The translations under genes and the position numbers were made by a program. From positions 200,785 through 264,784 of the forward strand of contig CAJFCJ010000070.1 of assembly GCA_904063045.1 (NCBI GenBank): 64,000 nucleotides of DNA, given 5' to 3'. This DNA is from Dimorphilus gyrociliatus (lineage: Eukaryota > Animalia > Annelida). Shown here piece after piece: positions 7,491 to 64,000 of the stretch (the stretch's first letter is position 1; each line of letters opens with the position of its first letter). The notes under the pieces are model-generated. The model saw only the letters and a program-made list of their open reading frames with translations, searched no databases and was not told the DNA's origin.

Positions 7491-10400
7491 TTAAGACCTT
7501 GCTTCCATGAAAGGTCTTGGGCTTGAAACAATCAGTGTGTCACCATCCTTTTTGAATGTTGGATAAGTTTGTAGTGGTATTTCTTCTGGTTCAGCTGTTG
7601 GGGCTGTAGGTAACTTTTCTTTTCTAGCTAAAAGCTTAGCTAGCTTGGTGAAGTGTACTCTTTTCCAGTCTTTCTTCCAAAGAAACCAAATCAGAATCCC
7701 AATTCCAATGATTATTGTTATTGGAAGAAGTATGTTGATGAGTGTTTTGTAAGGTGTCCTGGCCCATGATGAGAATATATGTTCAGTTTTAGACAAAGCA
7801 GCATCAATGCCCAAATCATTAGCAAAGTTTAAGTGCTCTTTATGTCTTGTTAAAGTGTCTTGAATGTATTCTAAAACTTGTTGAACTTGTTGTTGCTTCT
7901 TACCAACATCCTCTTTTATACCAAGCTGTATTAACTCAGTAAGTCTAGCAACCTCTAATTTTGGTTCTTCAATTTCATTGCTTATTTTCATTCTGATTGA
8001 TTGTGCTGCTGCAGTTTGAAATCTGCATCCTTTCTTTGTGTAATAGATGAATGTTTTCTTTCCAGAATACATTGCATGTTGATTGTGTTCAATGTCCAGT
8101 GGGTTTTTCTTAATTTTGAACAGGTGTTGTGTTTGGTCACAACCTCCATATCTTATATCTTCTTTTGTTATGTGGTAAGCATGATGGAGTATTGGATCAA
8201 CTGAGAATAAGAGATCTTTATACTTGATGAGAAATTCTTTGGAGCATAATCCACTTTTGGTGATAATTGTTGTATCACACACTACTTGAACTGATTTTAA
8301 TTCTGTACAAGTATTTAAGGTTGTTAGATCACCAAGCCATGTACTGTGCATTCCATGCTTAGATCCAAGTATTGTTGGTAGTTGAGGTGCCAATGGTGTG
8401 AGTAATGCTACCATCTTGTTTCTCATAATGAATTCTTTGCATAGAAGTTGTGATACTTGTTTGAAAACTGTTTGTAAATTTTGGAAATTTTTATCAATGT
8501 TATTTAATAAAGCAGATGTTCAAATAGCATCTGCTATGTCTATTTTGTGAAATTTTGGCATCTGTATGCTTTCTGATACTCTTCTCCTCCATTCATGCTT
8601 CTTTGGTGTTCTTTGCAAAAGTGTAAATTTTCCATTTGCTTGATGTGTTTGAAATTGTTTATCTTTTGGACTTTGGTACCAAGTGTCCAGTCTTGGTAAG
8701 GGATTGAAACTAATTTTCTTCTTGTTGAGTTCAAAATCTTCTGCTTTTGCCATTCTATCAGGTTCCATTTTGGTTGTTTTCAACATTTTGAGTATGTATT
8801 TGTTGTTAATATCCCATATATCAGGTGAGATTATTTCTCTGACCATCCAGGTCCTAACCAGTGGTGTTACATGATTTTTGATCAGCATATGATAAGTCTT
8901 GTCACCATCTCTATACCAATCATTATAGGTTAGTATATTTTGTATTTCTGTATTATTTGCTTTTCTCAAAGTTGATATCTTTCCATCATAATTCTGCAAT
9001 CTTGCAACTTCTTTGTTTGAAATGATTTTATATTTGATATCTGCCATCATTCTGTTATCAGCATAATTTGAATTTGTAAGATCAGTTCTTAATAAGTCGT
9101 ATTCCTTCTGGGGTACTAAAATTCTTGTTCCAGGACCACCATATCCTTTGATATATCTATCTTGATAAGGTAAATCCATTATTGCATAGTTGGGACATGA
9201 AAAATATCCTCCAAGCTTAATGCACTCTACATTGTAGGATACTGCTTTCCATGGGGATTCATGACCAAGGAGATTTTGTCCTTTCTGAGGATTGAAAATG
9301 ATAATGGAATCCAGAGTTCTACAAAATTTATGTTTGATAGAACAGTCCTCTAAATATTCCAAGTTGGTTGTTATCTTATCCTGACTTGGGTGCCAATAAG
9401 CTTTGCCAATTTGGAGAATTGTTGTAAATTCTTCAACCACTGTTGTTCTTGGCCATTTGTAGTTTGATCCTTTGTTTTCATTGTACATTAGAAGGTTTCC
9501 TTTTTCAATGAGTTTTTGTCCATTTAAGGTCTTTTTTGACAATAACATTTTTCTGCATTGTTTGTCACTTAAGGTAAGTGTTTGTTTTTCAACTCTGTGT
9601 TTCTTTGCTCCAAAGAAGTAATGAGTGTAAAAGTTGATTCTTCTCTTTACCAAACACTTAACAGCTTGTATTGCCAAATTATCAGCTTTAATTTCATAAA
9701 TATTTGCCATTATTTTGGTCATTTGTTTAGTTTTGAATGTGCAAATTGGTTCATCAGCCAGATCAAATGACTGATGTACTTGTTGCCCTTGACAGAATTG
9801 TACTGAAGGAAGCATTCTCACAGTTATGTTTGCTTTTGTTATTGATACATTTCCCTGAACCAAGTTTAATAAGCATAGCGCTAGCAGAGTGTAAACAATG
9901 GATCCTCTTATAGGAAGTGTTCCAACTTTCCTTTCTTGTTTCTCTACCTTGAGTGTGTTAACTCTAGTTGGTTGTTTGTTAGCCAATCTTAGTCTACTAG
10001 CATGGTAGAATTTTCTTTTGCCATTTAATATTTTCAATTCATAAAGACATTTTGTAGTATCAGTAGCAGTTACAATGTATGGTCCACTCCATTTGCTTGT
10101 ATTTATTCTATTCATTCCTTGACCAATGTGTTCATTTTTTATGTGTACCCATTCACCAATTTGGTAAGTTGGGGGTTTTCTTGTGATAGTTTTGTTTACT
10201 CTATCTCTATATGCCTTCTTTTTCATGACAGATTTGCACAATGCAGTTGCTCTTATTTCTTCCATATCATGCTTTCTATCAAATAGAAATTTTGTTGTTG
10301 GTTCTAATCTTGGAACTTCCATTAACAAATCTAAGACATTCCTATTCTTCAATCCAAATAATATTTCATGTGGAGTTTTGCCTGTGCTTCCCACTGGAAT

Positions 10401-11966
10401 TTGGTTTAAGCATGTTTGAATTATTGGTAATTGTCTTGTCCAATCTGTTAATTGTTCCATAACTACATGTTTATGTAGTGCTCTGCGAATTTCCAAATTC
10501 TTTCTTTCTACCATTCCATTACTTTGGCTATGGAATGCTGTTGTTTTTATTTTCCTTATTCCCATTGATGTAACCATCTCTGTAAATATTTCCCCCAGAA
10601 AATTCCGTCCTTGGTCTGTGAGAATTTCTTCTGGAATACCAAATATTGGAAAGTAGTTAAAAAACAAGTGTTTTGATATTTCTTCAGCTGTCTGAGTTTT
10701 TAATGGAAATAGATTTGTAAATCTTGACATGTGATCTATAATGACAAGTATGTATTTGTAAGATTCATGTCCTGTTAGTGGTCCCATTATGTCCATTGCA
10801 ATTCTTTGCATTGGTAGAGTTGGATGGGGTGTTTCAACCAATAGATGTTTGTTTCCAGGTGCTCTTAATTGTTCACAGAATTTGCAATTGTTTATATGGT
10901 CTTTAATTGTTTTCTTAAGTTGTGGATGCCAGAAAGCTTGTTCCAAAGTATGAATTGTTATGTCTACACCATAGTGTTCAAATATTTGATGTTGATGTAT
11001 TTGGTTCAGTAGGTTTGTTAAAGTTAGTAGTGGAATTACCAGTAATGGTTGACAACCATTCAGATACCATACTAAATCATCTTTGACAAACATATGTTCA
11101 ATAAAATTTTTGTATTCCTTGAACATTTCAACATCAATATTTGCTCCTTCCAATTTTTCTACAATTTTCATTAGCGTGTCATCCAAAACTTGTTCAGTGT
11201 AGAAGTTTATCTCAACAGGTTTATTTTTTAATTTCATGACCTGTAATTTTTTGTCATCTGCTTCTTCATCATAACCATCATTATTGTCTAAAATGTCATC
11301 CAAACAATCAGCTAAGTCTTCTAAATCTTCTGTATCAATATAAAAGCATTTAAGCATATCCTTTCTTTCTGCTAATTGTGGAATTGTATTGCCATTTTGT
11401 TTTTCTTCATTTAGTCTTTCCTTTAGTAAATTTCGGAAATCAATAACTTCATCAGTTTCTCCAATTCTGGATATCCAGTCTGCTCTGTTGGTTCTTCCAG
11501 GTATGTAAATTATTTCAAAGTCCATATCCATAAGTGCCATAACCCATTTAACAGTACTTGAATTTAATTTGTTTTGTACAAATGTTTGTACCAAATTTTG
11601 GTGATCAGTGTAAAGAAAAAATTTCTTATACTGCAAGTAATGGGAGAATTTTTGTACTGCCCAATAGACTGCAAAAGCTTCTTTTTGATAAGCTGCATAC
11701 CTTAGTTGTGTATTGATTAGGAGTTTTGAAGCAAAAGAAATTGGCTTTCTTATTTTCTTTCCATCTTCTTCCCATTCTTGTTCTAAAACTGCACCAACTG
11801 CATAATTGGAGGCATCTGTTGTTAGATAGAATGGTTTACTAAAATCAGGTAGTTGAAGTATTGGTGGTTCTGTCATTGATTTCTTTAGTGTCTGATACGC
11901 TTTCTCTGCTTCTGTAGTCCATTTTAGTCTTTCAGTCTTCTGATGTAGTTTTAATAATTCTCTCAA
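7491..11966 (-). pseudogene. pol(RNaseH-IN)-env polyprotein of family A, interrupted by one in-frame TGA at 8520-8522
   Basis: ORFs 8520..11966 and 7491..8426 are in the same frame. The intervening codons (TSALLNNIDKNFQNL...LLCKEF) align with family B env (QTSTLLHGIDSNFKNL...LLCNQF). Confidence 0.85.
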
Positions 11967-52090: not shown

Positions 52091-53133
52091 GGGATAATGA
52101 TCTTATCTCTTCATTTCAGAAATTTTTAAATAATTAATGATCAATGTCAATTGAAATTCAATTTTATCAATATTTTTTATTTATTAAGTTTGAGGAGAAA
52201 TTGATTATCTGACTTTTCTTTATTAATACATTCAGTTTTTTGTTTGTCTCCACGAGTCAATAGCAAATGTCCATAAATTGATAGACTGGTAGACATAAAG
52301 AAAATCTATAGAAAATGAAGTATAAAATGCTAACTTAGTTTCCCTATTTTCACTTTTTTTTGATGTAATTTAAAAAGAAAATATGGGGTAAAATGTCATT
52401 GAATAAATACTTTTTATTTGGTAATATAAATGTTAGCAACTGGCCTGTTTGGTAGTGAATTTTATATTTCTATAATTGACCTTCACCTTTGAATTAATAT
52501 AGACTAGAAATCTACCTAACCCTAACCTTAAATAATTTATAAACCAAAGACATAAAACAAAGCAATTGATGTCAATTTCCAATTATCGCTAAATAAACTA
52601 TAAATCTGAAATTGAAACTTTATTCGAAGTTTCTATAGAATTCCAACCAGAATTTGTATCATAAACAATTTGTTGAGAAGCAATTTTAACTCTTTCAGTT
52701 GCTTGTAAATTATTTGTTTTATAGGCAAAAATGCTGAATGTTGTTCAGTAGCATTGGGCTTATATCCTGATATATATGTATCTGAGGATGTTGATCTTGG
52801 AGATCCTTCAATCAGCTTTCAGGATAATCTATCATTTTCATCTAAATGCAGAATAATCCCTTTTGATGCTTTATTGTTGAGTCCTTGGAAAGTTAATGAG
52901 AATGATTAGAAGCATTCTAAGCAAATTATCAGAGGAAGCTAAATTTACAGAAACAAATAGAAAATGGTCTGGAAATCAAAAGGAACAATTAAAACTTACA
53001 TATCTATAGGGCAGGAATTAAAAGGAAAGAACATCTATGAAAATAATTCTAGTTAAAAAATATAAGCATTATGGAAATATTTAGGGTGGGCGAAATTACA
53101 AGAAAATAGCTTATTAAAATGTCTTCTAAATTG

Positions 53134-53427
53134 TTAGGGTTAGGGTTAGGGTTAGGTTAGGGTTAGGGTTAGGTTAGGGTTAGGTTAGGGTTAGGGTTAG
53201 GGTTAGGTTAGGGTTAGGTTAGGGTTAGGGTTAGGTTAGGGTTAGGGTTAGGTTAGGGTTAGGGTTAGGGTTAGGGTTAGGGTTAGGGTTAGGGTTAGGT
53301 TAGGGTTAGGGTTAGGGTTAGGGTTAGGGTTAGGGTTAGGGTTAGGGTTAGGGTTAGGGTTAGGTTAGGTTAGGTTAGGGTTAGGGTTAGGGTTAGGGTT
53401 AGGGTTTGGTAAGGGTTATGGGTTAGG
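53134..53427 (+). repeat. Telomeric-type tract of mixed TTAGGG/TTAGG, degenerate in the last ~20 bp
   Basis: Directly visible. G-rich strand on +. Confidence 0.98.
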
Positions 53428-53736
53428 CCACTCACACAACTCTGGTAATGTTTTTGGGAACTGGTTAGCTAGTGTTCCAGTGTAATACCTAACTTTTACT
53501 CAATGTTAGGTAGGGGTTCTCCTTGGTCAGGATTATAGATCTGGGCTCCCAGTTCTAGTCAGGTTTTGGGAACTGGTTAGTTGGTGTTCCAGGGTTCTAC
53601 CAATTTTCCAATAGGTAGGAGTTCTCTATGTCTGAGCTCCTTGGTGCTTCAGTGCTCTGTCAAACTCTTAGTCTTATTCAATAACAATTAAATTTTTTCT
53701 TTTTCATCAACTTTTTATTTTAAACTTTAAAACATA

Positions 53737-53781
53737 TTACAACAATATTTCGCCTCTACTTGAGGCTTCATCAGGTTGTAA
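53737..53781 (-). ncRNA. Minimal type I hammerhead ribozyme (HHR1)
   Basis: UUACAAC CUGAUGA A GCCUC-AAGUA-GAGGC GAAA UA UU GUUGUAA: 7-bp stem I, 5-bp stem II, palindromic mini stem III (AUAU). Confidence 0.85.
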
Positions 53782-53884
53782 GTTAAACTGAACACAAACA
53801 TAAGTATTTATACCATCACCACAAAAAAAATTTATATATAAAACATGAAAACAAGATGGCTGCCCTTGCACTAGCGCCACCTAA

Positions 53885-54076
53885 CTACATTTTTCTTTGT
53901 TTCTTTGAAGGTACTACTTCAAATTCATCACCTGATCTTTTGATTAGGAGTCTTTGTTGTATTCCAATATTGCTATTCTCTTTTGGAGTGCTTTCATATT
54001 GATACTCACCATCTTCCATATCATCATAGTTGTCATCATCTTCTTCCTCCTCAGTCTGTTCCTTGGTAGGGACCAT
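53885..54076 (-). CDS. Possible small acidic ORF with bipartite NLS in the PLE1 3' region
   Basis: 63 aa, EEEEDDDNYDD tract, KR-x10-KKQRK, good start context (AAGAAATGG). Confidence 0.35.
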   Translation of the reverse strand: MVPTKEQTEEEEDDDNYDDMEDGEYQYESTPKENSNIGIQQRLLIKRSGDEFEVVPSKKQRKM

Positions 54077-54104
54077 TTCTTTGTCTGACTAAGTTGTAAG
54101 AACT

Positions 54105-54330
54105 GTTGAAGCTCACTTGAGCTCTTGGAGCTCTATTGAGTTCTTGGAGCTCTACTGAGCTCTTAGAGCTCTTGGAGCTCTACTGAGTTCTTGGAGCTCT
54201 ACTGAGCTCTTCAAGGTCTCCTGTGGTATTGGAGCTCAACTGAGCTACTGTAGCTCCTTGGAGCTCTTGGACCTTATTGTAGCTAACTGTAGCTTTTGGA
54301 GTTCATTGTAGCTTGTAGAGCTTGTTGTAG
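54105..54330. repeat. Short tandem repeats built on the palindrome GAGCTC
   Basis: GAGCTCTTG / GAGCTCTACT units downstream of the RT stop. Confidence 0.85.
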
Positions 54331-54343
54331 CTGCTGAAATTCA

Positions 54344-56697
54344 TTACAGTTCTTGGAGTTCACTTTGGCTTTTCTGGAGTAGAATTTTTTCTATGTGTTT
54401 TTCCATCATCTCATCAACCTTCTTATTGATAAGCCAGTGTCTGGTAGTAGTTGGGATCCTAAAGGCAGTTATTGACTTATACATTTGGAAGTGAGAGCTG
54501 TTAGGGGCTAGCTGGTGGATTGTTCTCTTGACTTTCTCAGCTATTAGTTGGGCTCCATTGTGTTGTGGTATGAGGAGTGGTACCATTTCCTTGGTGGTAA
54601 AACCTTCATGTTTATTAAGACCATGTGGGAACAGTGTATCCAAATGGTTGATGATTTCAGTTTCTTTTCTCATTAACCAAACTATTACTGAGCTCTCTGT
54701 GAGTTCCTTAGGAGCTACAGCAGCTATGTAGATCTTGAACTTCTTGATATCATGTGTTGCCATATGGTTATATAGTGGTCTATCTATCTTGTTTTTGAAG
54801 CCCAAATTATGGGTACCCCATCTACACTTGATAGTATCTGTAGTCATACCCACATATGCTAACCCACACATAGAGCATTGTAGGATATAGACACAACCAT
54901 TGGTGTTACAGTTAATGCTTTGGGTTAAGCTCCAAGAGTTGACCTGGTATAGGTCAAATACCTCATCTCTGGAGTCCAGTCTGAGGCAAGTATCACATCT
55001 AGTGTTACAACATTTATTGACTTTATACCTCAGTGCCTTTTTTTCTTCAGCTCTGGTGTTGAATTTTTTGATGGTGTCCCTCCCCATTCTCCAGGTGTAG
55101 CCATTGACTTTATTGATTCTAATGAGATCTTTGAACTGTGAGATAGCCATTTTGGGATCTTTGCAGTTTCTCATATATCTAGTTAGCTGGCTCATTAGGA
55201 TACCTCTGAATGTGTGTGGTGGATGATTGGATTTGGTGTGTAGCAGTATTCTGGAGTCAGTAGCCTTAAAATGGGTTTCCCAGGAAAGAGAGTTCCCTAG
55301 TATATGTAGGTCCAAGTCCAGAAAAGTACTTGATTTAGGGTTCTGGGACCAAGTGAGCTTGATATCTGGATTTCTGTTGTTTAGTCTTGTCTTGAACTCC
55401 ATGATGTCCCTGTCTGGTTTAGTGACCAAAATGATATCATCAATGTACCTGCCATAGTACTCAATGTCCTCTGTAAAATCTGTGACCAATTCATGTTCCC
55501 AGGTGTGTAACACTATGTTTGCATATGCAGGACTAAATGGAGCTCCCATAGCTGTGCCCTTTATTTGCAGGAACCTGTGGTTCCCAAAGGTGAAATCATT
55601 GTTGTTGAGACAAATCCAAAGGAGTTCCAAGATTAGTTCATCAGGTCTACCTTCATGGTAGTGGGTTAACATGAACTCTTTAACAGCTTTTATGCCCCAT
55701 TGAGGGTTAATGCTTGGGTATAGAGCTTCTACATCTGCTGTGAAGATCCCTCTGTTTTGCCAATTATGTATCATAGATAGTTTGCCAATGCAATGTTGGG
55801 TGTTTTTAACATAGCTAGTGGTACTTTTTGCCATTTTGACCAGATAGTGATCAACAAATTTAGATATTTTATATAGATCAGAGCCTACATAGCTCACCAC
55901 TGGTCTCCCCTTGGGGATCCTATATGGTACTCTCCATTGGGAGCTGTGTTTATGAATTTTAGGTAGGAGGTAAAACTTTCTATCTCCTGGGCTATTCTGT
56001 GGAGCCATCAGAGTTGCTGTAGATTTGGTAATAATTTTCATTGTAACCAATTCATTAAGGATTTCATTTAACCGGGTCCATTGGGTAGAGCTTATTTTAT
56101 TGCTGACCTGTTTGTAGGTTGTTCTGTCACAGAGCTGTGTCATGGCTTCAAAGACATAGTCCTCTTTGTCCATTAAGACAATCCTTCTTCCTTTATCAGC
56201 TGGTTTAATGATAATGTTAGGATGATTGTTGAGGAAGTTTTTCATTAGGCCTTGATTTTCAAAACCCTTCTGGGCTCTATTAATTTTTTCAGAGCCCTTT
56301 ATAATGTCATATATCCTGTCTGTGATATGGTTAATTTCTGGAATATGACTAGAGGGCATGTAATTTAACTCCCTCATTAGTTCAGGTAGAGATGGTGCTT
56401 GTATGTCAAGAAGTTTTTTCTTTAGTGGATTATTTCGAAATCTTGGTGTACCATTTTTCTCAATGATCTTTAGCCATTTTAATGTATAATCCAAGATCCC
56501 TGTGAAGTGCAAGTTTATAAATTTATTTGGGGCCCAAGTCCAGGCAAAGCCCAGACCTTGTGCCATAGTGTTCAGGCAAGAACTCTTGATGTTAGAGTTC
56601 CTACATAGGTTAAAAACCATACTTGGTTCTGTTTTATTGATAAAAACATGTTTAAAAACATTATAATTGTTATGCTGTTGTGCTTGAAGAGTTAGGA
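54344..56697 (-). CDS. PLE1 RT - GIY-YIG endonuclease (frame open 26 codons upstream of the ATG at 56620)
   Basis: VFNL..QGLGF, IKPADKG, FYLLPKIHK, GRPVVS, DVEALYPSI, GTAMG, YIDDI. Linker CCNTRCDTC. VYILQCSMCGLAYVGMT..R..H..H..E..GLN. Confidence 0.95.
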
Positions 56698-57474
56698 GTT
56701 TCCCTGGTCCATAGTCTCCTCATCAGCACTCATTTTCTCTGTAATTCCTTTAAATAAGACAGTCATGATTGCCAATTCCTTTCTTAGTTCTGAGATTTCA
56801 TCCTTAGAGTTCTTGTAAGGTTCTTTGTGTCTGGTTTTGTCTGCTGGTTTCTTGGATCTCTGTATGGTAGGGAGCTCTTTGAAATTTTCATGGAGCTCTC
56901 TATTGAAAGAGTCATCTAAGGGAGCTTTTAGATTTTTGGTAACCAAGTATACACTTTCTTTAAGTTGGGCCCAATTAATCTTTTTGCCATATTTTTGTAT
57001 CGATCTGGTTTTGGCTACTTCAATAGCTTTCTTAACCTCTGATTGATTGTAATTTTGCTGATCATTTTTTATCTTGTCCCTCATTTTAGAGAGCCTCTCA
57101 TTGAGCTCCTCCAGCACCACTCTATTTGTTTCTCTAGCACAAGTATTGGCTATTTCATGTAGTTGGTTGAGTCTTTCCCCAGTAATGGGACCTCCTGTGA
57201 TTCTAATTGAGTCCATCATATCCATGGCCTTTTTGGTCCAAGGGTTATATTCCTTAAGTCTCTCAATCTGGTGAATAGAACTGTAAGTTTTACTCATAGC
57301 TCTAGTCAGGGCTTTTTCCTTGTCACTTAGAGAACCTTTAAAACCATTTGCATCAGGTGCAGTCTGGCTCTTTGTGACTTGTACCCATCTGGGTTTGTCT
57401 GGAGCTCTGGAGTAGGGTGTCTTTCTTCCTGTTTTTTTTGTTCTTCTAGGAGCTTGGTTTTGTTTAGGGTCCAT
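56692..57474 (-). CDS. PLE1 ORF1, basic and coiled-coil-like
   Basis: 260 aa, strong start context GCAATGG, helical charged heptads (LEELNERLSKMRDKI; KDEISELRKEL). Confidence 0.85.
   Translation of the reverse strand: MDPKQNQAPRRTKKTGRKTPYSRAPDKPRWVQVTKSQTAPDANGFKGSLSDKEKALTRAMSKTYSSIHQIERLKEYNPWTKKAMDMMDSIRITGGPITGERLNQLHEIANTCARETNRVVLEELNERLSKMRDKIKNDQQNYNQSEVKKAIEVAKTRSIQKYGKKINWAQLKESVYLVTKNLKAPLDDSFNRELHENFKELPTIQRSKKPADKTRHKEPYKNSKDEISELRKELAIMTVLFKGITEKMSADEETMDQGNS
56698..56704 (-). promoter_or_regulatory. -1 ribosomal frameshift slippery heptamer G GGA AAC
   Basis: In the ORF1 frame (CAG GGA AAC TCC TAA). The -1 frame is open from here into the RT ORF. Confidence 0.75.
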
Positions 57475-57478
57475 TGCC

Positions 57479-57609
57479 AGGGTTAGGGTTAGGGTTAGGG
57501 TTAGGGTTAGGTTAGGGTTAGGTTAGGGTTAGGGTTAGGTTAGGGTTAGGGTTAGGTTAGGGTTAGGTTAGGGTTAGGGTTAGGGTTTAGGGTTAGGTTA
57601 GGGTTAGGG
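57479..57609 (+). repeat. Second mixed TTAGGG/TTAGG tract between PLE1 and PLE2
   Basis: Directly visible. Confidence 0.98.
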
Positions 57610-57856
57610 TTTTATATAGGTTTGAACTAGACACTAAGGTCTCAGTTCTGATGAAAGTCAAATAACTTCCACCAAACTTTCAGAAGATCCCATAATGAAA
57701 TGGAATGCAAGAGTAAGAACTTATTGTACATTTTAAAACAAGTACTCTTCCCATCACTAATCAATTTATGTCTGTTTGTTTGTTTTTGATTTGGTTTTAA
57801 ATTGCAATAGTATGTTTAACCTAGGATATATTAATCTAGATGGTTGCCAAGTATGG

Positions 57857-57911
57857 TTGACCTACCATGGTTTCGTCTTCCCCTTTTAATGCAAAGACTC
57901 ATCAGGGTCAA
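57857..57911 (-). ncRNA. Type I hammerhead ribozyme (HHR2)
   Basis: UUGACC CUGAUGA GUCUU-14nt-AAGAC GAAA CCAUGG UA GGUCAA: complete core, palindromic stem III ACCAUGGU, GUA cleavage triplet. Confidence 0.93.
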
Positions 57912-58706
57912 TTCAGAGGATAGTATAACCTAAGAACTATCTTGAAGGGGGGGAGAGGATCAATTCTACAATTGAATCCTTCCCTGCAGTAAGTTTTTGG
58001 TTATAAGCCTAATCATAAATTGTTATATGTATGTATATGTATCATTATGTGTAGGTGTATGTGTGATTGTGTATGTATATATCAACCATTGAAGTTGATT
58101 TTTGTAATAGTTGTCAACAAGTTGAGATTTGTTTTTTGTAATTTTTTTGTAATTTTTTTAGTTTGTTTCCTATTAGGATTATGAAGATGATTTTGGTCAT
58201 ATAGATAGTTGTATTTTGATGCCTAATTTTTTATAATTTGTGAGGTTATATATGGTATTCATAAGAACTTTTGTTTTTAACAATGAATGCATGTGTGTAT
58301 GTTTGTGTGTAAATATGTTTTTTATTTGTTTTGAATGGATAAAAGTTGATGTTTTTTAATTTTTGATTGAATTTGTGATGATCAGATGTTAAGTTCAACT
58401 TGTACTGTTCCTCAAAACCCCTTGACTCTTCTTACTTGTGATTAGGTTTTATATAGGTTTGAACTAGACACTAAGGTCTCAGTTCTGATGAAAGTCAAAT
58501 AACTTCCACCAAACTTTCAGAAGATCCCATAATGAAATGGAATGCAAGAGTAAGAACTTATTGTACATTTTAAAACAAGTACTCTTCCCATCACTAATCA
58601 ATTTATGTCTGTTTGTTTTTTTTGATTTGGTTTTTTTGATTTGGTTTTAAATTGCAATAGTATGTTTAACCTAGGATATATTAATCTAGATGGTTGCCAA
58701 GTATGG

Positions 58707-58761
58707 TTGACCTACCATGGTTTCGTCTTCCCCTTTTAATGCAAAGACTCATCAGGGTCAA
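58707..58761 (-). ncRNA. Type I hammerhead ribozyme (HHR3, identical to HHR2)
   Basis: Same sequence in the second repeat copy. Confidence 0.93.
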
Positions 58762-59795
58762 TTCAGAGGATAGTATAACCTAAGAACTATCCTGAAGGGG
58801 AGGAGAGGACCAATTTTATAATTGAATCCTTCCTTGCAAGAATGTTCTTGTTGTATGGATGTTGAAATTGTATGTGTATTTGTATGTTTATATATGTATG
58901 GATGAATATCAACCATAGAAGTTGATTCTTTATAATACTTGTCAATAAGATGACTTTTGTTTTGTAATATCTAGTTGCTTACTTTTCAGTTATTGAAATT
59001 TTCTTTGGTCTGATATATAGTTATTTGCCTAATGGTTTTTTTTGTTGTCCTATTGGTATGTTTAGGTATAATGTAGGTACAATGTGTATATAATGTTTAC
59101 AAAAGATGCCAGAGTTTATAATTTTCATTTGTTCCTGTTCCTCATTGAACAATTTTTGAACTGTTAAACAGCAAGATATATAATCCAAGTTGTCTGACAG
59201 GTCTTATAGTGTTAATGAAAGAAATGAAATTGATGAAAATCAACTATAACATCTTAAAGTCACCTGGACATATATAAACAAATAGATGCATAAATGTAAA
59301 ACATTATAGTATCTTTAATTTCACAAATGAACAAACAAACATATAGCTTACTTTGTTTTTTCTTTCAGAGTTGTTTGATGTAGAAAAATGATCTTTTGTT
59401 GTATGTAGATGTTGAATCACTAAACAGAGTTTTTGTAGAGAGCAGTCCTTCTTGTTCTGAGAATTTTCTTGAAGTGATGATGTTTGATAGACCTTGTAGC
59501 TTATATAGAGGAGTGTTATGTAATTGACATATCCTAAGATATGTCAGTTTATCTTGACAAGTATCTGGTATTACATAAAAGTTTTAGTATCCCAAGCCTA
59601 GACACATTTGGTATTATATAAGAAGTGATATGTCAGCCTCTGGCATTCCAGTGTGTCACACACCTAATCAATTTTGCATTGATATAAATACATAGTTATA
59701 TTATGCTAATATTACTATTTTAAACTAGAGAAATATCAAAGTGTTTATATAAAATATACAGAGATTGAAATTTAGTTTTGATAGGTCTGTTAATT

Positions 59796-60023
59796 TCACT
59801 CATTGTGTTGTTCCTCTATAGCCTGAATATCTTGTCTGTTTAATCTTCTTCTTCCAGTTCTTCTTTGTTGTTGTTCTATCACATCTTTAGTGTTTACTAA
59901 TATCTCATTAAAAATTAAATGTTGAACAATATTTCTTAAAGGAGATATCTTGTCCTGTTGGAGTCTTCTATGAAAAGGATCTCCTCTTATAATGCCATTG
60001 ATATAAACAATATTTGTAAACAT
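59796..60023 (-). CDS. Short ORF downstream of the 276-aa ORF (possible -1 frameshift extension)
   Basis: 75 aa, ATG 5 nt after the upstream stop. Frame open from 60053. Confidence 0.4.
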   Translation of the reverse strand: MFTNIVYINGIIRGDPFHRRLQQDKISPLRNIVQHLIFNEILVNTKDVIEQQQRRTGRRRLNRQDIQAIEEQHNE

Positions 60024-60028
60024 TTTTT

Positions 60029-60859
60029 TTAACCTTTCTGGTAGAAATTTTGATTATTAAAATTATCCTGAACTTTGTATGATATAAACAGCATACATTC
60101 CTTAATATTTCCATTACTTTGATAAATAGCTGGAAAATTATCATCAATATCATTAATGGTGTCAAAAGGAATATGTAGAGCTACAATGTTAGTTTTTATC
60201 TTCCATTTTGATAAGATTTCTTTGCAATTTTCAAATGTTAATCCACAAATATTTACAATCAAAATATTTCCATGAAAATTGATATTCCTCTTAACATCTT
60301 CTATTTGAAACAAATCCAAATCACTCAAACTAGCATCTGTTAAGAGAAGCAAATTACAGTTGGTAGTAAATTTCACTGCTGGTTGTTGAATTTTCATAAG
60401 ATTTTCCATTTCCCCTTCTGTTAAATTCACTCCAATATCTGCAAAAGATGCTAGTAGTTCACCAACATTGAAATGTTTTCTTCTATTAACTTTGATTGTA
60501 TTATTAAATCTTACAAGCTGGTCAGTACCATTCAAATATCTTAATATCACTTCTCCAAGTTGTTGTTTATTTATATTATTTACTTGGTGTTGTTCAACAA
60601 GCCACATTTTTTCATCACAAAATTGTTTAAATTTCATCAGTTTGTCTACAGTATCTTTTTCAAATTTACTTGCATCAAAAATTGGAGGATGATTTCTGTC
60701 ATCTCTTCTAAATCTTTGAAGATGATTATAAAATGTTCCAAAGTTAAAAAATTGTTGAAAAGATGGTGGTAAAAAATGTTCAATATCAATTATTTGATTG
60801 ATAAGAATTGCATCATTTTCTATTCTTTCAATTTGATTTTGTGGAGTATTATTTGCCAT
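60029..60859 (-). CDS. Orphan 276-aa ORF within PLE2
   Basis: Long open frame in very AT-rich DNA, co-oriented with RT. No confident motif. Confidence 0.6.
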   Translation of the reverse strand: MANNTPQNQIERIENDAILINQIIDIEHFLPPSFQQFFNFGTFYNHLQRFRRDDRNHPPIFDASKFEKDTVDKLMKFKQFCDEKMWLVEQHQVNNINKQQLGEVILRYLNGTDQLVRFNNTIKVNRRKHFNVGELLASFADIGVNLTEGEMENLMKIQQPAVKFTTNCNLLLLTDASLSDLDLFQIEDVKRNINFHGNILIVNICGLTFENCKEILSKWKIKTNIVALHIPFDTINDIDDNFPAIYQSNGNIKECMLFISYKVQDNFNNQNFYQKG

Positions 60860-60962
60860 TATAGAAAATCTATAAAAACAAAATAATTTAGTAAAATTTA
60901 GTATATTCTACACAAAAAGAATATTATAGATATGAACTGAACAAATCTAAGAATACATAGAA

Positions 60963-60966
60963 TATC

Positions 60967-61003
<37 letters not shown>
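60963..61003. repeat. (TA)n microsatellite between the PLE2 ORFs
   Basis: Directly visible. Confidence 0.9.
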
Positions 61004-61004
<1 letters not shown>

Positions 61005-61097
61005 GTTGTACAGATATATGCAGTGAAAAGCAAATTATTATGAAGCAAACAAAACAAATATTCAAAGGAAAACAACTAATTAAAAAATATTGAAAGT

Positions 61098-63992
61098 TTA
61101 AAGTTTCTTCTTAATTCTTCTTCCAGTTCTAACCATCTTCTCTGCAACTACTGGTTTATGTTCGTCTGTTTCCTTCTCCATCTTCCTCTTCATAGTGAAT
61201 TTTCTTGTAATTGTATCAAACTTTGGTTTTTTTCCTGGTTGAGGTGGTGCACTAAGTGAAGATGTTTCTTCTGCATTCTTCTTTTTATAAAAATGTTTAA
61301 TTGTTGATGTTCCTGTTTTATTTAGTGAAAAATGACATTTTTCTGATGAATCTGTACTAGTTGTATTTCTTTTATGAAATAAGGAAGTAGACATATTTTG
61401 TTCCTGTTTAAAATAAATGTTTTTATGAATTAATTGAAAATAACTATTTATGTTGTTTGTAAAAGCAAATATCAGAGGAATGTTTTTAAATATGGAATTC
61501 TTATCACTTAATAATTTATAGGTTTTTGTTAATTTTTTTAACACTGGTCCATGATCATTTCTATAAGGCATAATTAATGGTAGCTTTGAATATACTGGAC
61601 AACTGGTATATCTGGCTAAGCCAAAGGGATAATACATGACATTTTTCATATTCAAGTGATAAATATATCTGTTCATTTCAATTGTTGATTTATCTCTTTG
61701 CAATTGTTCATAAGGAAATATTGTTATATTAAATTGATTTTCTGCAAAATGTTGATGCTGGATATAGTTTTCTACTAGGTCAATATTATTCAATTCCAAA
61801 TATTTTCTTGATAGAAGGTATTTAAGTGTTTGTAAGATGTTGATTTTTTTATGTTGCTGTATAGAAAAGTACATCATTTGTCCACATTCTTTACATTGTA
61901 ATAGAAATACTTTTGAGTTATCTGTAATTAAATCTACACAGTTTTTCCTATAAATGAAATTCATGTTTAGAGGGCAGAATATCTTTTTTCTTATGTTAAA
62001 ATATATTCTTAATTCCTTTGGAATATTCCACTGTTTCTTTCTATTTTCTTCCAACACTCTTTCATAGTTTTCTTTCTTCATTTGGTCTTTAATTACAGAC
62101 TGTATTGCTTTTTTTATTTCTTTAGCACTGTAGCCTTGACTGGAAAGTGGTTTCATCACAGTTTGACAAGTTTGAAAGAATAGAAATGGAGAGGAGCTGT
62201 TATTAAGAAATCTTTTGAATTGAGATTTTAAAAGTCCTTTAAAGATATGTTTAGGATGAAAAGAAGTTCTATGAAGTTGATGAAATGTTTCACAATTTTT
62301 GAAGAAAGTTAGATGATCCAATTGATTTGTTGAGAGAAATCTTGTTCCTTTAAATAGAATTAAATCTAAAAAGTTGATTGATTGAAAACTAGTTGTTCCC
62401 TCAAACTTTAAATTTTTTAATATATTATTGACTTTTTGAAGATAGCTATGAAATGTATCAATGCTACCTGTCCAAATTAGGAAAATATCATCCAAATATC
62501 TTTTATAAAATAGAGGTTTAGGTCTAATGTTGAAGAGGTAGACTTCTTCCACCCAAGCCATCCATAAGTTTGCATAAGCAGGAGCATAACTTTGACCCAT
62601 AGCACAACCACTCTTTTGTAAGTATATTGTATCTAAAAATTTAAAATGATTCTTATGCAAGTTGAATTTGAGAAGTTGAATAAGAAAATCATCAGGTCTG
62701 TGCTTGTAGGAATACTTTTCAAAAAAATATTTTACAGCTTTCAATCCAGTGTAAGTATCAATGTTTGTATACATACTTTTTATGTCCAGAGTCACCAAAA
62801 GAGCATCATCTGGAATTGTTATTCTATTAAGTTCATCCAACAGTTGTTTAGAATTACCAATATATGAAGAATGTAGCATACTAATTGGTTTGAGGTGATG
62901 TGAGATATATCTTGATATTTCATAAGATTCTGTCCTTAAATTGCTAACAACAGGCCTTCCTTTAGGAATTTTACCATCAACCAACCATTGTTCTGGTTCC
63001 TTATGTATTTTAGGTAAGCCATAAAATATTCTATTCTCAAAAGAATGCTTCTTTGTACACAGAGAATCCAACAAATGTTTATATTCTTTTTCATCCAAGG
63101 TAACTTTAAATGTTTTAATTAGGTCTTTATAATAGAAAATTGAGTTTTCTAAAAATTTATTACCAGAAATATTTATATTAGAAGTTGTTGATAGTTTACA
63201 ATATTGTTTATTATCAGAAAGTAATTGATTGCACATGTAGATATAATCTTCAGTATTTTGTATCACAACACAAGATCCCTTGTCAGCTGGCTTAATCACA
63301 ATGTCTAATGATAAAAACTTTCTCAGAGATTTAAAGAAATCTTTGTCAAATTTTCCAAGTTTTTGATTAGAATTCTCTTTAAAAATATTACTTTGAATTG
63401 CCTTTCTGCATCCTTTGAAAAATTGTAACATTTCATCACTGTCACCATCACCACCATCATCATCATCAGTATCATCTAGTTCTTCAACAGATGTTATATT
63501 TCTTTCAAATCCTTCTTTTGGTATCCATTGATAGTTAATACATGTAAGATTTTCCAGATTTGTTGATTTATTTTGTTTTTTAATGATTGATACTTTTTTA
63601 AAGAATCTCTCTAAATTGAACAATGTGTATTGCTTCCATTTGTCTGGTTTTATACTTTCATGTACAAACTTTAAACCAAGATTAAAAAAACTATTGACAT
63701 CATTTGGAATCTGATATTTGCTCAAATTAACAACATATTGAGTATTTAATTGTTTATAGAAATTAAATCCAGACATTAATATTACCTTGTTAGTTGATGT
63801 ATCTATGTCCATTGTTTCCTCTTTCTGATCTTTGATAATTCTCTGCAAAGTTTTCATTACTAAATCAATTGAAAATTCTTGTGCCTTCTTTGTCAGGTGT
63901 TTACATTTCGAATTTCCAGTTGGATTATCTGTAAATCCCAATTTTCTCATATCAGTCATATCAAGAACAGTGGCTTGGTTCTTAGTTGCCAT
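61098..63992 (-). CDS. PLE2 reverse transcriptase with degenerate GIY-YIG-like domain (may extend upstream of the window)
   Basis: VVNLS..LGLKF, IKPADKG, FYGLPKIHK, GRPVVS, LDIKSMYTNI, GCAMG, YLDDI. The EN region reads VFLLQCKECGQMMYFS...GLAR. Confidence 0.93.
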   Translation of the reverse strand: MATKNQATVLDMTDMRKLGFTDNPTGNSKCKHLTKKAQEFSIDLVMKTLQRIIKDQKEETMDIDTSTNKVILMSGFNFYKQLNTQYVVNLSKYQIPNDVNSFFNLGLKFVHESIKPDKWKQYTLFNLERFFKKVSIIKKQNKSTNLENLTCINYQWIPKEGFERNITSVEELDDTDDDDGGDGDSDEMLQFFKGCRKAIQSNIFKENSNQKLGKFDKDFFKSLRKFLSLDIVIKPADKGSCVVIQNTEDYIYMCNQLLSDNKQYCKLSTTSNINISGNKFLENSIFYYKDLIKTFKVTLDEKEYKHLLDSLCTKKHSFENRIFYGLPKIHKEPEQWLVDGKIPKGRPVVSNLRTESYEISRYISHHLKPISMLHSSYIGNSKQLLDELNRITIPDDALLVTLDIKSMYTNIDTYTGLKAVKYFFEKYSYKHRPDDFLIQLLKFNLHKNHFKFLDTIYLQKSGCAMGQSYAPAYANLWMAWVEEVYLFNIRPKPLFYKRYLDDIFLIWTGSIDTFHSYLQKVNNILKNLKFEGTTSFQSINFLDLILFKGTRFLSTNQLDHLTFFKNCETFHQLHRTSFHPKHIFKGLLKSQFKRFLNNSSSPFLFFQTCQTVMKPLSSQGYSAKEIKKAIQSVIKDQMKKENYERVLEENRKKQWNIPKELRIYFNIRKKIFCPLNMNFIYRKNCVDLITDNSKVFLLQCKECGQMMYFSIQQHKKINILQTLKYLLSRKYLELNNIDLVENYIQHQHFAENQFNITIFPYEQLQRDKSTIEMNRYIYHLNMKNVMYYPFGLARYTSCPVYSKLPLIMPYRNDHGPVLKKLTKTYKLLSDKNSIFKNIPLIFAFTNNINSYFQLIHKNIYFKQEQNMSTSLFHKRNTTSTDSSEKCHFSLNKTGTSTIKHFYKKKNAEETSSLSAPPQPGKKPKFDTITRKFTMKRKMEKETDEHKPVVAEKMVRTGRRIKKKL

Positions 63993-64000
63993 TTGAATAT

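What the first reader, a model, noticed from the sequence alone, without database searches (positions are those of the whole stretch)
61600..61915. PLE2 keeps an open but catalytically eroded GIY-YIG domain: possible intermediate in endonuclease loss
Aligned by eye to PLE1: VY becomes VF, YVG becomes YFS, the conserved Arg is absent and GLN becomes GLA. CxxC, an HxH and the overall spacing remain, and the 964-codon frame with all RT motifs is intact. Telomeric PLEs known so far lack EN outright. A dead-but-retained domain next to an EN-intact telomeric neighbour would capture the transition to overhang-primed retrotransposition (inference).
Basis: partly seen in the sequence, partly recalled or inferred. 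Interest (0 to 1): 0.8.

Follow-up and report, generated by a model that had tools for sequence, protein, structure and literature searches.

The report
Conserved dead endonuclease domain, telomeric retroelement
A telomere-attaching Penelope-like retrotransposon family of the tiny annelid Dimorphilus gyrociliatus keeps a domain derived from the GIY-YIG nicking endonuclease that has lost its catalytic residues but is still under strong selection, so it is a repurposed pseudo-nuclease and not a domain caught in decay.

Summary
Window 61608-61922 (minus strand, PLE2 residues 691-795) is homologous to the GIY-YIG endonuclease of Penelope-like elements (PLEs). It lacks the residues that were invariant in all 35 canonical PLE endonucleases I aligned: Arg, His, Glu, Asn and the Gly of YIG. 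The CxxC pair, one His and the Gly of the "GLN" motif are kept.

The "intermediate in loss" reading is only partly right:
- **Old and shared.** The same losses occur in all seven diverged family members (about 35-79% identical in this domain). One of them, P0002, comes from a different sequencing run and has no close copy in this genome.
- **Under selection.** dN/dS of the domain is 0.16-0.25, about the same as the reverse transcriptase (RT).
- **PLE1 is not the ancestor.** In the RT tree, neighbour PLE1 (intact endonuclease) belongs to another lineage. PLE2's nearest relatives outside its family are canonical endonuclease-bearing PLEs.

The family ends in a hammerhead ribozyme followed by CCCTAA repeats, like Athena, Coprina and Terminon elements. 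Its full ORF is about 1,700 aa. The window copy is only the C-terminal 60% of that ORF, cut off by a DNA transposon just past the window edge.

Craig et al. 2021 already report endonuclease loss and endonuclease remnants inside endonuclease-bearing PLE clades. I rate this a new variant of a known kind, of moderate interest. The scan had noted the same idea on an overlapping stretch (s1-080998).

The parts
61098..63992 (-). PLE2 open frame, 964 aa plus stop. It is the C-terminal ~60% of a ~1,700-aa family ORF; the N-terminal part is cut off by a transposon just beyond the window end.
   Evidence: It matches residues 701-1707 of the C76 paralogue at 78% identity.
62193..63305 (-). Reverse transcriptase region (residues 230-600), including the YLDD motif.
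   Evidence: alignment with PLE1, which matches Pfam RVT_1. dN/dS 0.11-0.18.
61608..61922 (-). GIY-YIG-derived pseudo-endonuclease core (residues 691-795). Predicted order of elements: strand, strand, helices, strand, helix. The catalytic Arg, His, Glu, Asn and the YIG Gly are replaced.
   Evidence: Structure model pLDDT 76.8; best structural match is the I-TevI catalytic domain, Z 5.9. dN/dS 0.16-0.25.
61884..61895 (-). CxxC pair (C700, C703), the first half of the zinc-finger-like CCHH motif. Invariant in all 42 aligned domains.
61749..61757 (-). HxH (H746, H748). H748 is invariant in all 42 aligned domains; H746 is invariant within the PLE2 family.
61413..61607 (-). Conserved module after the endonuclease (residues 796-860, modelled as strand-helix-strand), shared with canonical PLEs.
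61101..61130 (-). Basic C-terminal tail RTGRRIKKK(L/V/I), conserved in family copies. I infer it may be a nuclear localisation signal.
60029..60859 (-). Downstream accessory ORF (276 aa), present after the RT ORF in other family copies. No recognisable domain.
57612..58860 (-). Two tandem 3' repeats of about 840 nt, each carrying a hammerhead-ribozyme core (CTGATGAG...CGAAAC) at 58755-58720 and 57905-57870.
   Evidence: The same motif lies downstream of copies on C3, C51 and C68. Rfam gave no hammerhead hit at E<=1.
57479..57611 (-). Reverse-complement telomeric repeats, (CCCTAA/CCTAA)n on the element strand, ending the PLE2 3' end and abutting the 5' end of PLE1.
   Evidence: Short CCCTAA stretches at the same position in the C51 and C68 copies.
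54644..54898 (-). Comparator: the intact GIY-YIG domain of neighbour PLE1 (residues 575-659 of the ORF at 54344-56620).
   Evidence: PF01541, E 4e-6 and 6e-7.

Best explanation
PLE2 belongs to a family of Penelope-like retroelements in Dimorphilus gyrociliatus that attach to telomeric G-strand ends and so need no DNA nick.

Proposed mechanism (inferred from the Athena/Coprina/Terminon model in the literature):
- The transcript ends in a hammerhead fold followed by CCCUAA repeats.
- These repeats pair with a TTAGGG 3' overhang, and the RT extends that 3'-OH.

The former C-terminal GIY-YIG endonuclease has lost its catalytic set. Arg, His, Glu, Asn and the YIG Gly are replaced, and the first Tyr is mostly Phe. 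This loss happened before the family radiated.

The domain keeps the fold, the zinc-finger-like CxxC...H motif and the module that follows it, and selection holds it constant. The most likely reading is a pseudo-nuclease retained for a non-catalytic role, either holding DNA or the primer end, or supporting the RT structurally.

What is shown: homology, the residue losses, family-wide conservation, purifying selection, and the 3' hammerhead plus telomere-repeat anatomy.

What is inferred: lack of nicking activity, and the non-catalytic role.
For: - **Homology to the PLE endonuclease.** BLASTP collinearity with PLE1. hhalign probability 94%, E 1.4e-7 for the whole region and 90.7%, E 1.3e-6 for the core alone. 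The family profile reaches a canonical GIY-YIG PLE endonuclease (P0003) at E 2.6e-4 in 1.84 billion proteins.
- **Fold.** I-TevI catalytic domain ranks first in Foldseek for both structure models and first of 48,161 chains in VIA-align (Z 5.9, 86 of 92 residues aligned). Another restriction endonuclease ranks second.
- **Catalytic residues.** Seven positions are invariant in 35 of 35 canonical domains. Six of them (the second Tyr, Gly, Arg, His, Glu, Asn) are replaced in all or all but one of the 7 family members, and the first Tyr in 6 of 7. The CxxC pair, H748 and G791 are kept in all. Pfam GIY-YIG matches 0 of 7 against 35 of 35.
- **Selection.** dN/dS is 0.16-0.25 for the domain against 0.11-0.18 for the RT, in four pairs with dS 0.6-1.1. 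Bootstrap upper bounds are at most 0.48.
- **Age and spread.** At least 9 open copies at 45-100% identity in the genome. P0002, from another run, is at most 44% identical to anything in this genome and has the same domain state.
- **Telomere anatomy.** Hammerhead core followed by CCCTAA repeats at the 3' end in the window and in the C51 and C68 copies. 12 of 16 placeable copies have their 3' end facing the contig interior.
- **Nearest outside relatives.** They are ~700-aa PLEs with PF01541. The RT tree attaches the family among them.
Against: - No biochemical data exist. Inactivity is inferred from sequence, and a new active site built from family-specific invariant residues (E741, N742, H746, E762) cannot be excluded.
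- I could not inspect the model coordinates.
- The structural matches are weak (Z 5.9; Foldseek E 0.4-0.5). The better model used an alignment that included canonical endonucleases.
- No RNA-seq run was found, so expression is untested.
- Four copies have the opposite orientation, and no contig I examined ends in a terminal telomere array.
- The family's position in the RT tree rests on a long stem and weak support (90/52).
Confidence: 0.72

Rival explanations
1. One reading: a recently eroded endonuclease, relaxed in selection and on its way to deletion. On this view it is a snapshot of the transition from endonuclease-bearing to endonuclease-lacking elements, with PLE1 as the intact counterpart.
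For: The catalytic residues are gone while the frame is open. An endonuclease-intact PLE lies next to it between telomeric tracts.
Against: - dN/dS of the domain is 0.16-0.25, as low as for the RT.
- 42 invariant columns across six members that are 34-77% identical in this domain.
- The same state is found in P0002 from another run.
- PLE1 is in a different RT clade.
Confidence: 0.06
2. The domain is still a nuclease with a rewired active site. For example it could use the family-invariant Glu/Asn/His cluster (ENxxxHxH, PYEQ) and cut DNA or process RNA or ssDNA ends.
For: Many invariant polar residues are specific to the family: E741, N742, H746, N752, N755, E762, Q763, N781, K783. Purifying selection shows that some function is kept.
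Against: - Arg, Glu and Asn were invariant in all 35 canonical PLE endonucleases compared here.
- From general knowledge of I-TevI and UvrC mutants, which I did not test here, these residues are essential for GIY-YIG catalysis.
- H748 and the CxxC pair are the known zinc-finger-like CCHH motif, not catalytic residues (PMC8557442).
- The Glu of PYEQ corresponds to the PIE motif also present in canonical domains.
- The telomere-repeat 3' end removes the need for a nick.
Confidence: 0.12
3. The region is retained only as a structural spacer needed for folding or stability of the RT thumb and the conserved C-terminal module. It has no nucleic-acid contact of its own.
For: The module after the endonuclease is shared by all PLEs and lies downstream of the domain, so deleting the domain could disturb it. 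Low dN/dS is compatible with a purely structural role.
Against: - Athena and Coprina function without any endonuclease domain (PMC8557442).
- Strict conservation of the surface-type zinc motif and of many polar residues suggests a binding surface rather than a spacer (inference).
Confidence: 0.1

Closest known systems
Canonical C-terminal GIY-YIG endonuclease of endonuclease-bearing Penelope-like elements (Neptune/Nematis/Penelope-Poseidon type; NCBI cd10442, Pfam PF01541)
   Same: - Same position after the RT thumb.
- Same order of secondary-structure elements.
- Same CxxC...H zinc-finger-like motif, the P-x-E motif of the third strand, the P-x-G-L motif, and the conserved module that follows the domain.
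   Different: - Arg, His, Glu, Asn and the YIG Gly are replaced in the whole family.
- There is a 5-10 residue insertion after the second strand.
- The linker zinc finger (CX2-5CxxC) upstream is lost.
- No Pfam match.
[quoted passage not shown] 2017, as summarised in PMC8557442 and PMC6431247)
   Same: - The 3' end has a hammerhead ribozyme followed by short reverse-complement telomeric repeats.
- Head-to-tail chains of elements separated by telomeric tracts.
- A long N-terminal extension and extra ORFs.
- Location near contig ends.
   Different: - Those clades lack the endonuclease domain entirely; this family keeps a conserved dead one.
- By similarity ranking and the RT tree, the family sits with endonuclease-bearing PLEs, not with a known endonuclease-lacking clade. 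I did not test this against Athena or Coprina reference sequences.
- The host is an annelid with TTAGGG telomeres.
Endonuclease remnants (EN*) and endonuclease loss inside endonuclease-bearing clades: Chlamys subclades, the reduced Physarum EN-like domain, and Neptune-like MjPLE01 of kuruma shrimp (PMC8557442)
   Same: Secondary loss or reduction of the GIY-YIG endonuclease within lineages that otherwise carry it, explained there by adoption of another source of 3'-OH ends.
   Different: - The Chlamys remnants are N-terminal domains.
- No selection analysis is reported in the passages I read.
- This family combines a full-length, strongly constrained pseudo-domain with the telomere-repeat 3' end and a giant ORF.

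Membership tests
GIY-YIG nuclease superfamily (catalytically competent member) | Match to the family profile (Pfam PF01541) | tested here: not met
   No hit even at E<=10. 0 of 7 family members match, against 35 of 35 canonical PLE endonucleases.
GIY-YIG nuclease superfamily (catalytically competent member) | GIY and YIG motifs (two Tyr, one Gly) | tested here: not met
   First Tyr is F in 5 of 7 members, Y in 1 and C in 1. The YIG Tyr column is M, or Y/F if one residue is shifted. The Gly is F, A or S in 6 of 7.
GIY-YIG nuclease superfamily (catalytically competent member) | Conserved Arg, with the following His, in the first helix | tested here: not met
   Arg becomes L, I or V in 7 of 7. 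His becomes K, Q, N or D in 7 of 7.
GIY-YIG nuclease superfamily (catalytically competent member) | Metal-binding Glu and the C-terminal Asn | tested here: not met
   Glu becomes Y, H or L in 7 of 7. Asn becomes A or V in 7 of 7.
GIY-YIG nuclease superfamily (fold and descent) | Three-stranded sheet flanked by helices, and detectable homology | tested here: met
   hhalign 94% and 90.7%. I-TevI catalytic domain is the first structural match, Z 5.9 with 86 of 92 residues aligned; it also ranks first with the model built from the family alone. The scores are modest.
Penelope-like elements | PLE-type RT with PLE N-terminal motifs and thumb | tested here: met
   27% identity over 652 residues with PLE1, which carries RVT_1 and GIY-YIG. 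480 PLE-type relatives at E<=1e-20.
Penelope-like elements | Hammerhead ribozyme motif in the terminal repeats | tested here: inconclusive
   The CTGATGAG...CGAAAC core is present twice in the window and in other copies. Rfam gave no hammerhead hit at E<=1, and I did not test the full fold.
Telomere-attaching endonuclease-lacking PLEs (Athena/Coprina type) | Short reverse-complement telomeric repeats at the 3' end after the hammerhead | tested here: met
   Window 57479-57611. Also seen in the C51 and C68 (two) copies.
Telomere-attaching endonuclease-lacking PLEs (Athena/Coprina type) | No endonuclease domain | tested here: not met
   A full-length, conserved endonuclease-derived domain is present.
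Telomere-attaching endonuclease-lacking PLEs (Athena/Coprina type) | RT groups with the Athena or Coprina clade | not tested
   No Athena or Coprina reference sequences were available by reference. The 120 best database relatives listed are PLE-type proteins, most of them carrying GIY-YIG.
Terminons | Giant (tens of kb) multi-ORF unit with accessory enzymes | tested here: inconclusive
   A ~1,700-aa RT ORF with an upstream ~510-aa ORF and a downstream 280-400-aa ORF. No accessory enzyme domain was recognised. I did not determine the unit length.

The most novel reading that the evidence does not exclude
An annelid lineage of endonuclease-bearing (Neptune-like) PLEs independently evolved the Terminon/Athena lifestyle of priming on telomere overhangs. 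In doing so it converted its GIY-YIG nuclease into a zinc-binding, non-cutting module that holds the chromosome's single-stranded 3' end for the RT. This would be a pseudo-enzyme exaptation, functionally analogous to the DNA-anchoring parts of telomerase.
Probability: 0.3. Interest if true: 0.72.

Novelty: new variant of a known kind. Interest (0 to 1): 0.52.

Why it matters
PLEs are the closest retroelement relatives of telomerase, and how they moved between nick-primed and chromosome-end-primed reverse transcription is an open question.

Known telomeric PLE clades have no endonuclease domain at all, so they say nothing about what happens to the domain when it stops being needed. This family shows a third state. 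The nuclease chemistry is gone, but the domain is kept under selection as strong as on the RT, in several diverged lineages.

That gives a concrete and testable handle on non-catalytic roles of the PLE endonuclease domain, such as binding DNA or the primer end. It also documents a Terminon-like, telomere-associated retroelement system in an annelid with one of the smallest animal genomes.

Tried and rejected
- **Pfam on PLE2.** The whole ORF and the endonuclease-like segment gave no RVT_1 or GIY-YIG hit. This uninformative blank was resolved by profile-profile comparison.
- **PDB sequence search.** The family profile gave only chance-level hits.
- **First structure model.** With six family sequences alone the model was poor (pLDDT 53). 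I use it only as a check that I-TevI still ranked first.
- **Rfam on 52500-64000.** No hammerhead family at E<=1. The hammerhead cores were found by motif only.
- **Other parts of the element.** Pfam and ESM Atlas searches of the N-terminal extension, the upstream ~510-aa ORF and the downstream ORF found nothing. So there is no evidence for an alternative nuclease in the element, but a blank here is weak evidence.
- **Sequencing runs.** The search found one DNA holder and no RNA run, so expression could not be assessed.
- **Organism of P0002.** The organism behind run ERR14224706 could not be identified.
- **Rejected: sequencing or assembly error as the cause of the substitutions.** They recur in independent paralogues.
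- **Rejected: PLE1 as the ancestor of PLE2**.
- **Limits reached.** No more letters could be fetched from the genome.
Full report
**What is at the coordinates**

The window carries a 964-codon open frame on the minus strand, 61098-63992, called PLE2 here. PLE1 is the 758-aa frame at 54344-56620, also on the minus strand. PLE1 matches Pfam RVT_1 and GIY-YIG (E 4e-6; E 6e-7 for the domain alone). The two proteins align collinearly over 652 residues (27% identity, E 5e-60). The alignment runs through the RT, the thumb, the endonuclease region and a conserved C-terminal module.

The genome is that of the annelid Dimorphilus gyrociliatus. One family member is identical to the NCBI protein DgyrCDS14925 (P0001). 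The assembly has 77.9 Mb in 349 contigs. The window is about 29% G+C.

**Is the region derived from GIY-YIG?**

Pfam does not recognise it, even at E<=10. Other evidence shows the homology:
- A profile of six family members against a profile of four PLE1-type endonucleases gives hhalign probability 94%, E 1.4e-7 over 173 columns.
- Restricted to the core, from the first strand to the "GLN" position, seven family members against 35 canonical PLE endonucleases give 90.7%, E 1.3e-6.
- An exhaustive HMM search of 1.84 billion representative proteins with the family profile found only three proteins. Two are family members. The third is a 178-aa canonical PLE GIY-YIG fragment (P0003, E 2.6e-4).
- A structure model built on a 42-sequence alignment has pLDDT 76.8 and the order strand, strand, helices, strand, helix.
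- Its best match among 48,161 PDB representatives is the I-TevI catalytic domain (Z 5.9, rmsd 3.5, 86 of 92 residues aligned), followed by another restriction endonuclease. I-TevI also ranks first in Foldseek for this model and for a poorer model made from family sequences only.

The structural scores are modest, and the better alignment contains canonical endonucleases. I count the fold as supportive evidence and the profile comparisons as the main evidence.

**State of the catalytic residues**

In the 42-sequence alignment, seven positions are invariant in all 35 canonical domains. Their state in the seven PLE2-family members is:

| Canonical residue | PLE2-family members (7) | Residue in PLE2 |
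|---|---|---|
| Tyr of GIY | F in 5, Y in 1, C in 1 | F696 |
| Tyr of YIG | M in 7 (or Y/F with a one-residue shift) | M707 |
| Gly of YIG | F in 5, A in 1, G in 1 | F709 |
| Arg | L, I or V in 7 | L726 |
| His after the Arg | K, Q, N or D in 7 | K730 |
| Glu | Y, H or L in 7 | Y776 |
| Asn of GLN | A or V in 7 | A793 |

Kept in all 42 sequences are the CxxC pair (C700, C703), His748 and Gly791. Pro789 is kept in all but one. The CxxC pair and the His belong to the zinc-finger-like CCHH motif described for PLE endonucleases (PMC8557442). The upstream linker zinc finger (CX2-5CxxC) is present in PLE1 and in many canonical relatives. It is absent from the family.

Pfam GIY-YIG matches 35 of 35 canonical domains and 0 of 7 family domains. 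By the standards of the superfamily the domain should not cut DNA. That is an inference from sequence; no assay exists.

**Not erosion in progress**

Four results argue against an eroding domain:
- The genome holds at least nine open copies of the family at 45-100% identity to PLE2, plus broken ones. The endonuclease-like region is one of their best-conserved parts, with motifs such as LLQCKEC, ENFIQHQHF, NITIFPYEQ and HPFGLA.
- Pairwise Nei-Gojobori dN/dS for residues 691-795 is 0.16-0.25 in four pairs with dS 0.6-1.1. The RT gives 0.11-0.18, and the N-terminal part and C-terminal tail 0.20-0.45.
- Bootstrap 97.5% bounds for the domain are at most 0.48.
- P0002 (1,327 aa) comes from an 8.3-kb contig of another sequencing run. 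It is at most 44% identical to anything in this genome, shares the long N-terminal extension, and has the same catalytic losses. Its contig also carries a hammerhead-like core downstream of the ORF.

The loss is therefore old. It predates the radiation of the family, and the domain has been maintained since. This is the signature of a pseudo-enzyme with a retained function, not of a domain on its way out.

**Relation to PLE1**

I built an RT tree (IQ-TREE, LG+C20, 68 sequences, 378 columns).
- The PLE2 family with P0002 forms one clade (100/100) on a stem of 1.77 substitutions per site.
- The clade attaches among canonical ~700-aa PLEs that carry GIY-YIG. Its weakly supported neighbours (90/52) are P0016, P0019 and P0041.
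- The PLE1 family forms a separate clade (100/100) on a stem of 1.69.
- PLE2 is 32-43% identical to outside endonuclease-bearing PLEs but only 27% to PLE1.

The neighbours in the window are therefore two different PLE lineages that landed in the same telomere-associated chain. They are not a before-and-after pair. The tree is unrooted and has long branches, and I could not include Athena or Coprina references. The exact clade of origin remains open. Many of the closest outside relatives carry the Neptune/Nematis-type linker finger.

**How the element most likely works**

On the element's strand, the RT ORF is followed by:
- a 276-aa ORF (60029-60859);
- two ~840-nt tandem repeats, each with a hammerhead core (58755-58720 and 57905-57870);
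- a tract of CCCTAA/CCTAA repeats (57611-57479), which directly abuts the 5' end of PLE1.

PLE1 in turn ends at another tract (53133-53427). Copies on C51 and C68 (two copies) show the same arrangement: a hammerhead core followed 250-300 nt later by short CCCTAA stretches. The C3 copy has at least eight tandem hammerhead repeats.

Of 16 copies whose position can be judged, all lie within 40 kb of a contig end and 12 have their 3' end facing the contig interior.

This is the anatomy described for Athena, Coprina and Terminons. In that model, the reverse-complement telomeric repeats next to the hammerhead let the RNA pair with the G-rich overhang, so the RT can extend the chromosome end without an endonuclease (PMC8557442, PMC6431247). 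Under that mechanism a nick is unnecessary, which explains why the loss of catalysis was tolerated.

What the retained domain does is not shown. I favour a role in holding DNA or the primer end through the zinc motif (inference). A purely structural role and a rewired nuclease are the alternatives.

**State of the window copy**

The 964-codon frame is not a complete gene.
- It matches residues 701-1707 of the uninterrupted 1,707-aa frame on C76 at 78% identity.
- Residues 6-703 match a 721-aa frame about 2.5 kb further along the contig.
- Between them lies a 2.7-kb element with ~120-nt terminal inverted repeats (96-98% complementary) and an ORF with a FLYWCH zinc finger. It starts about 130 bases beyond the window end.

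So this copy is disrupted. Uninterrupted frames of at least 1,530 aa exist on C76, C3, C51 and C50.

**Comparison with what is known**

Craig et al. 2021 (PMC8557442) state that Athena and Coprina lack the endonuclease entirely. They also note several related cases:
- endonuclease-lacking families that arise within endonuclease-bearing clades (Chlamys PLE-X, Neptune-like MjPLE01);
- subclades with endonuclease remnants (EN*);
- a reduced EN-like domain in Physarum;
- stand-alone endonucleases in some Terminons.

The general idea of secondary endonuclease loss is therefore published. Three things appear new here. The first is a full-length C-terminal pseudo-GIY-YIG under demonstrable purifying selection. 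The second is its combination with a telomere-repeat 3' end and a ~1,700-aa ORF. The third is its presence in an annelid. A full-text search for "Dimorphilus gyrociliatus" together with "Penelope" found no paper. I classify it as a new variant of a known kind.

**Limits**

- No expression data are available.
- There is no access to the model coordinates.
- No reference sequences of the named PLE clades were available.
- The organism behind P0002 is unknown.
- I proposed no mended version of any element. The only consensus lines were column summaries for residue comparison: those printed by the alignment tool, and a majority line over the 35 outside endonuclease domains that my residue script printed.

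Noticed in passing
window 53133-57611; loci L025, L029, L038, L040: PLE1-type elements, which have a fully intact GIY-YIG endonuclease, are also flanked by TTAGGG/TTAGG tracts here and on other contigs. They occur in ~5.26-kb tandem spacing on C162 and C254. Elements with a working endonuclease thus share the telomere-associated niche, which is unusual for PLEs of that type.
   Followed up: partly
just beyond the window end: L032:4914-7631 (= C70:264913-267630, window-equivalent about 64129-66846): A 2.7-kb DNA transposon with ~120-nt terminal inverted repeats made of GGGTGCGAACGTACC subrepeats and an ORF with a FLYWCH zinc finger. It splits the giant PLE2 ORF.
   Followed up: yes
L031:1180-2703 (+) and L031:5337-9998 (+), contig C76; also contig C3: Uninterrupted family copies have a ~510-aa upstream ORF and a ~700-aa N-terminal extension of the RT ORF with no recognisable domain. 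The extension is only 48% identical between the C70 and C76 copies, whereas their RT halves are 78% identical.
   Followed up: partly
window 61101-61130 (-) and the same position in paralogues: The RT ORF ends in a strictly conserved basic tail RTGRRIKKK. A similar RTGR(R/K)(R/K)K motif sits near the end of the downstream ORF in the C76 and C51 copies. It may be a shared localisation or binding signal.
   Followed up: no
L004 and L005 (C68:192569-195457 + and C68:178108-180996 -): Two family copies in inverted orientation about 11.5 kb apart are nearly identical (dN 0.001, dS 0). This suggests a recent inverted duplication or gene conversion in a subtelomeric region.
   Followed up: no
L044 (C3:36737-41636): At least eight tandem ~698-nt repeats, each with a hammerhead core, lie downstream of the C3 copy. 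This is a retrozyme-like array.
   Followed up: no
window 8520-11966 (-): A Ty3/gypsy-type pol fragment with RNase H, integrase zinc-binding and integrase core domains, in an 1,148-aa frame.
   Followed up: no
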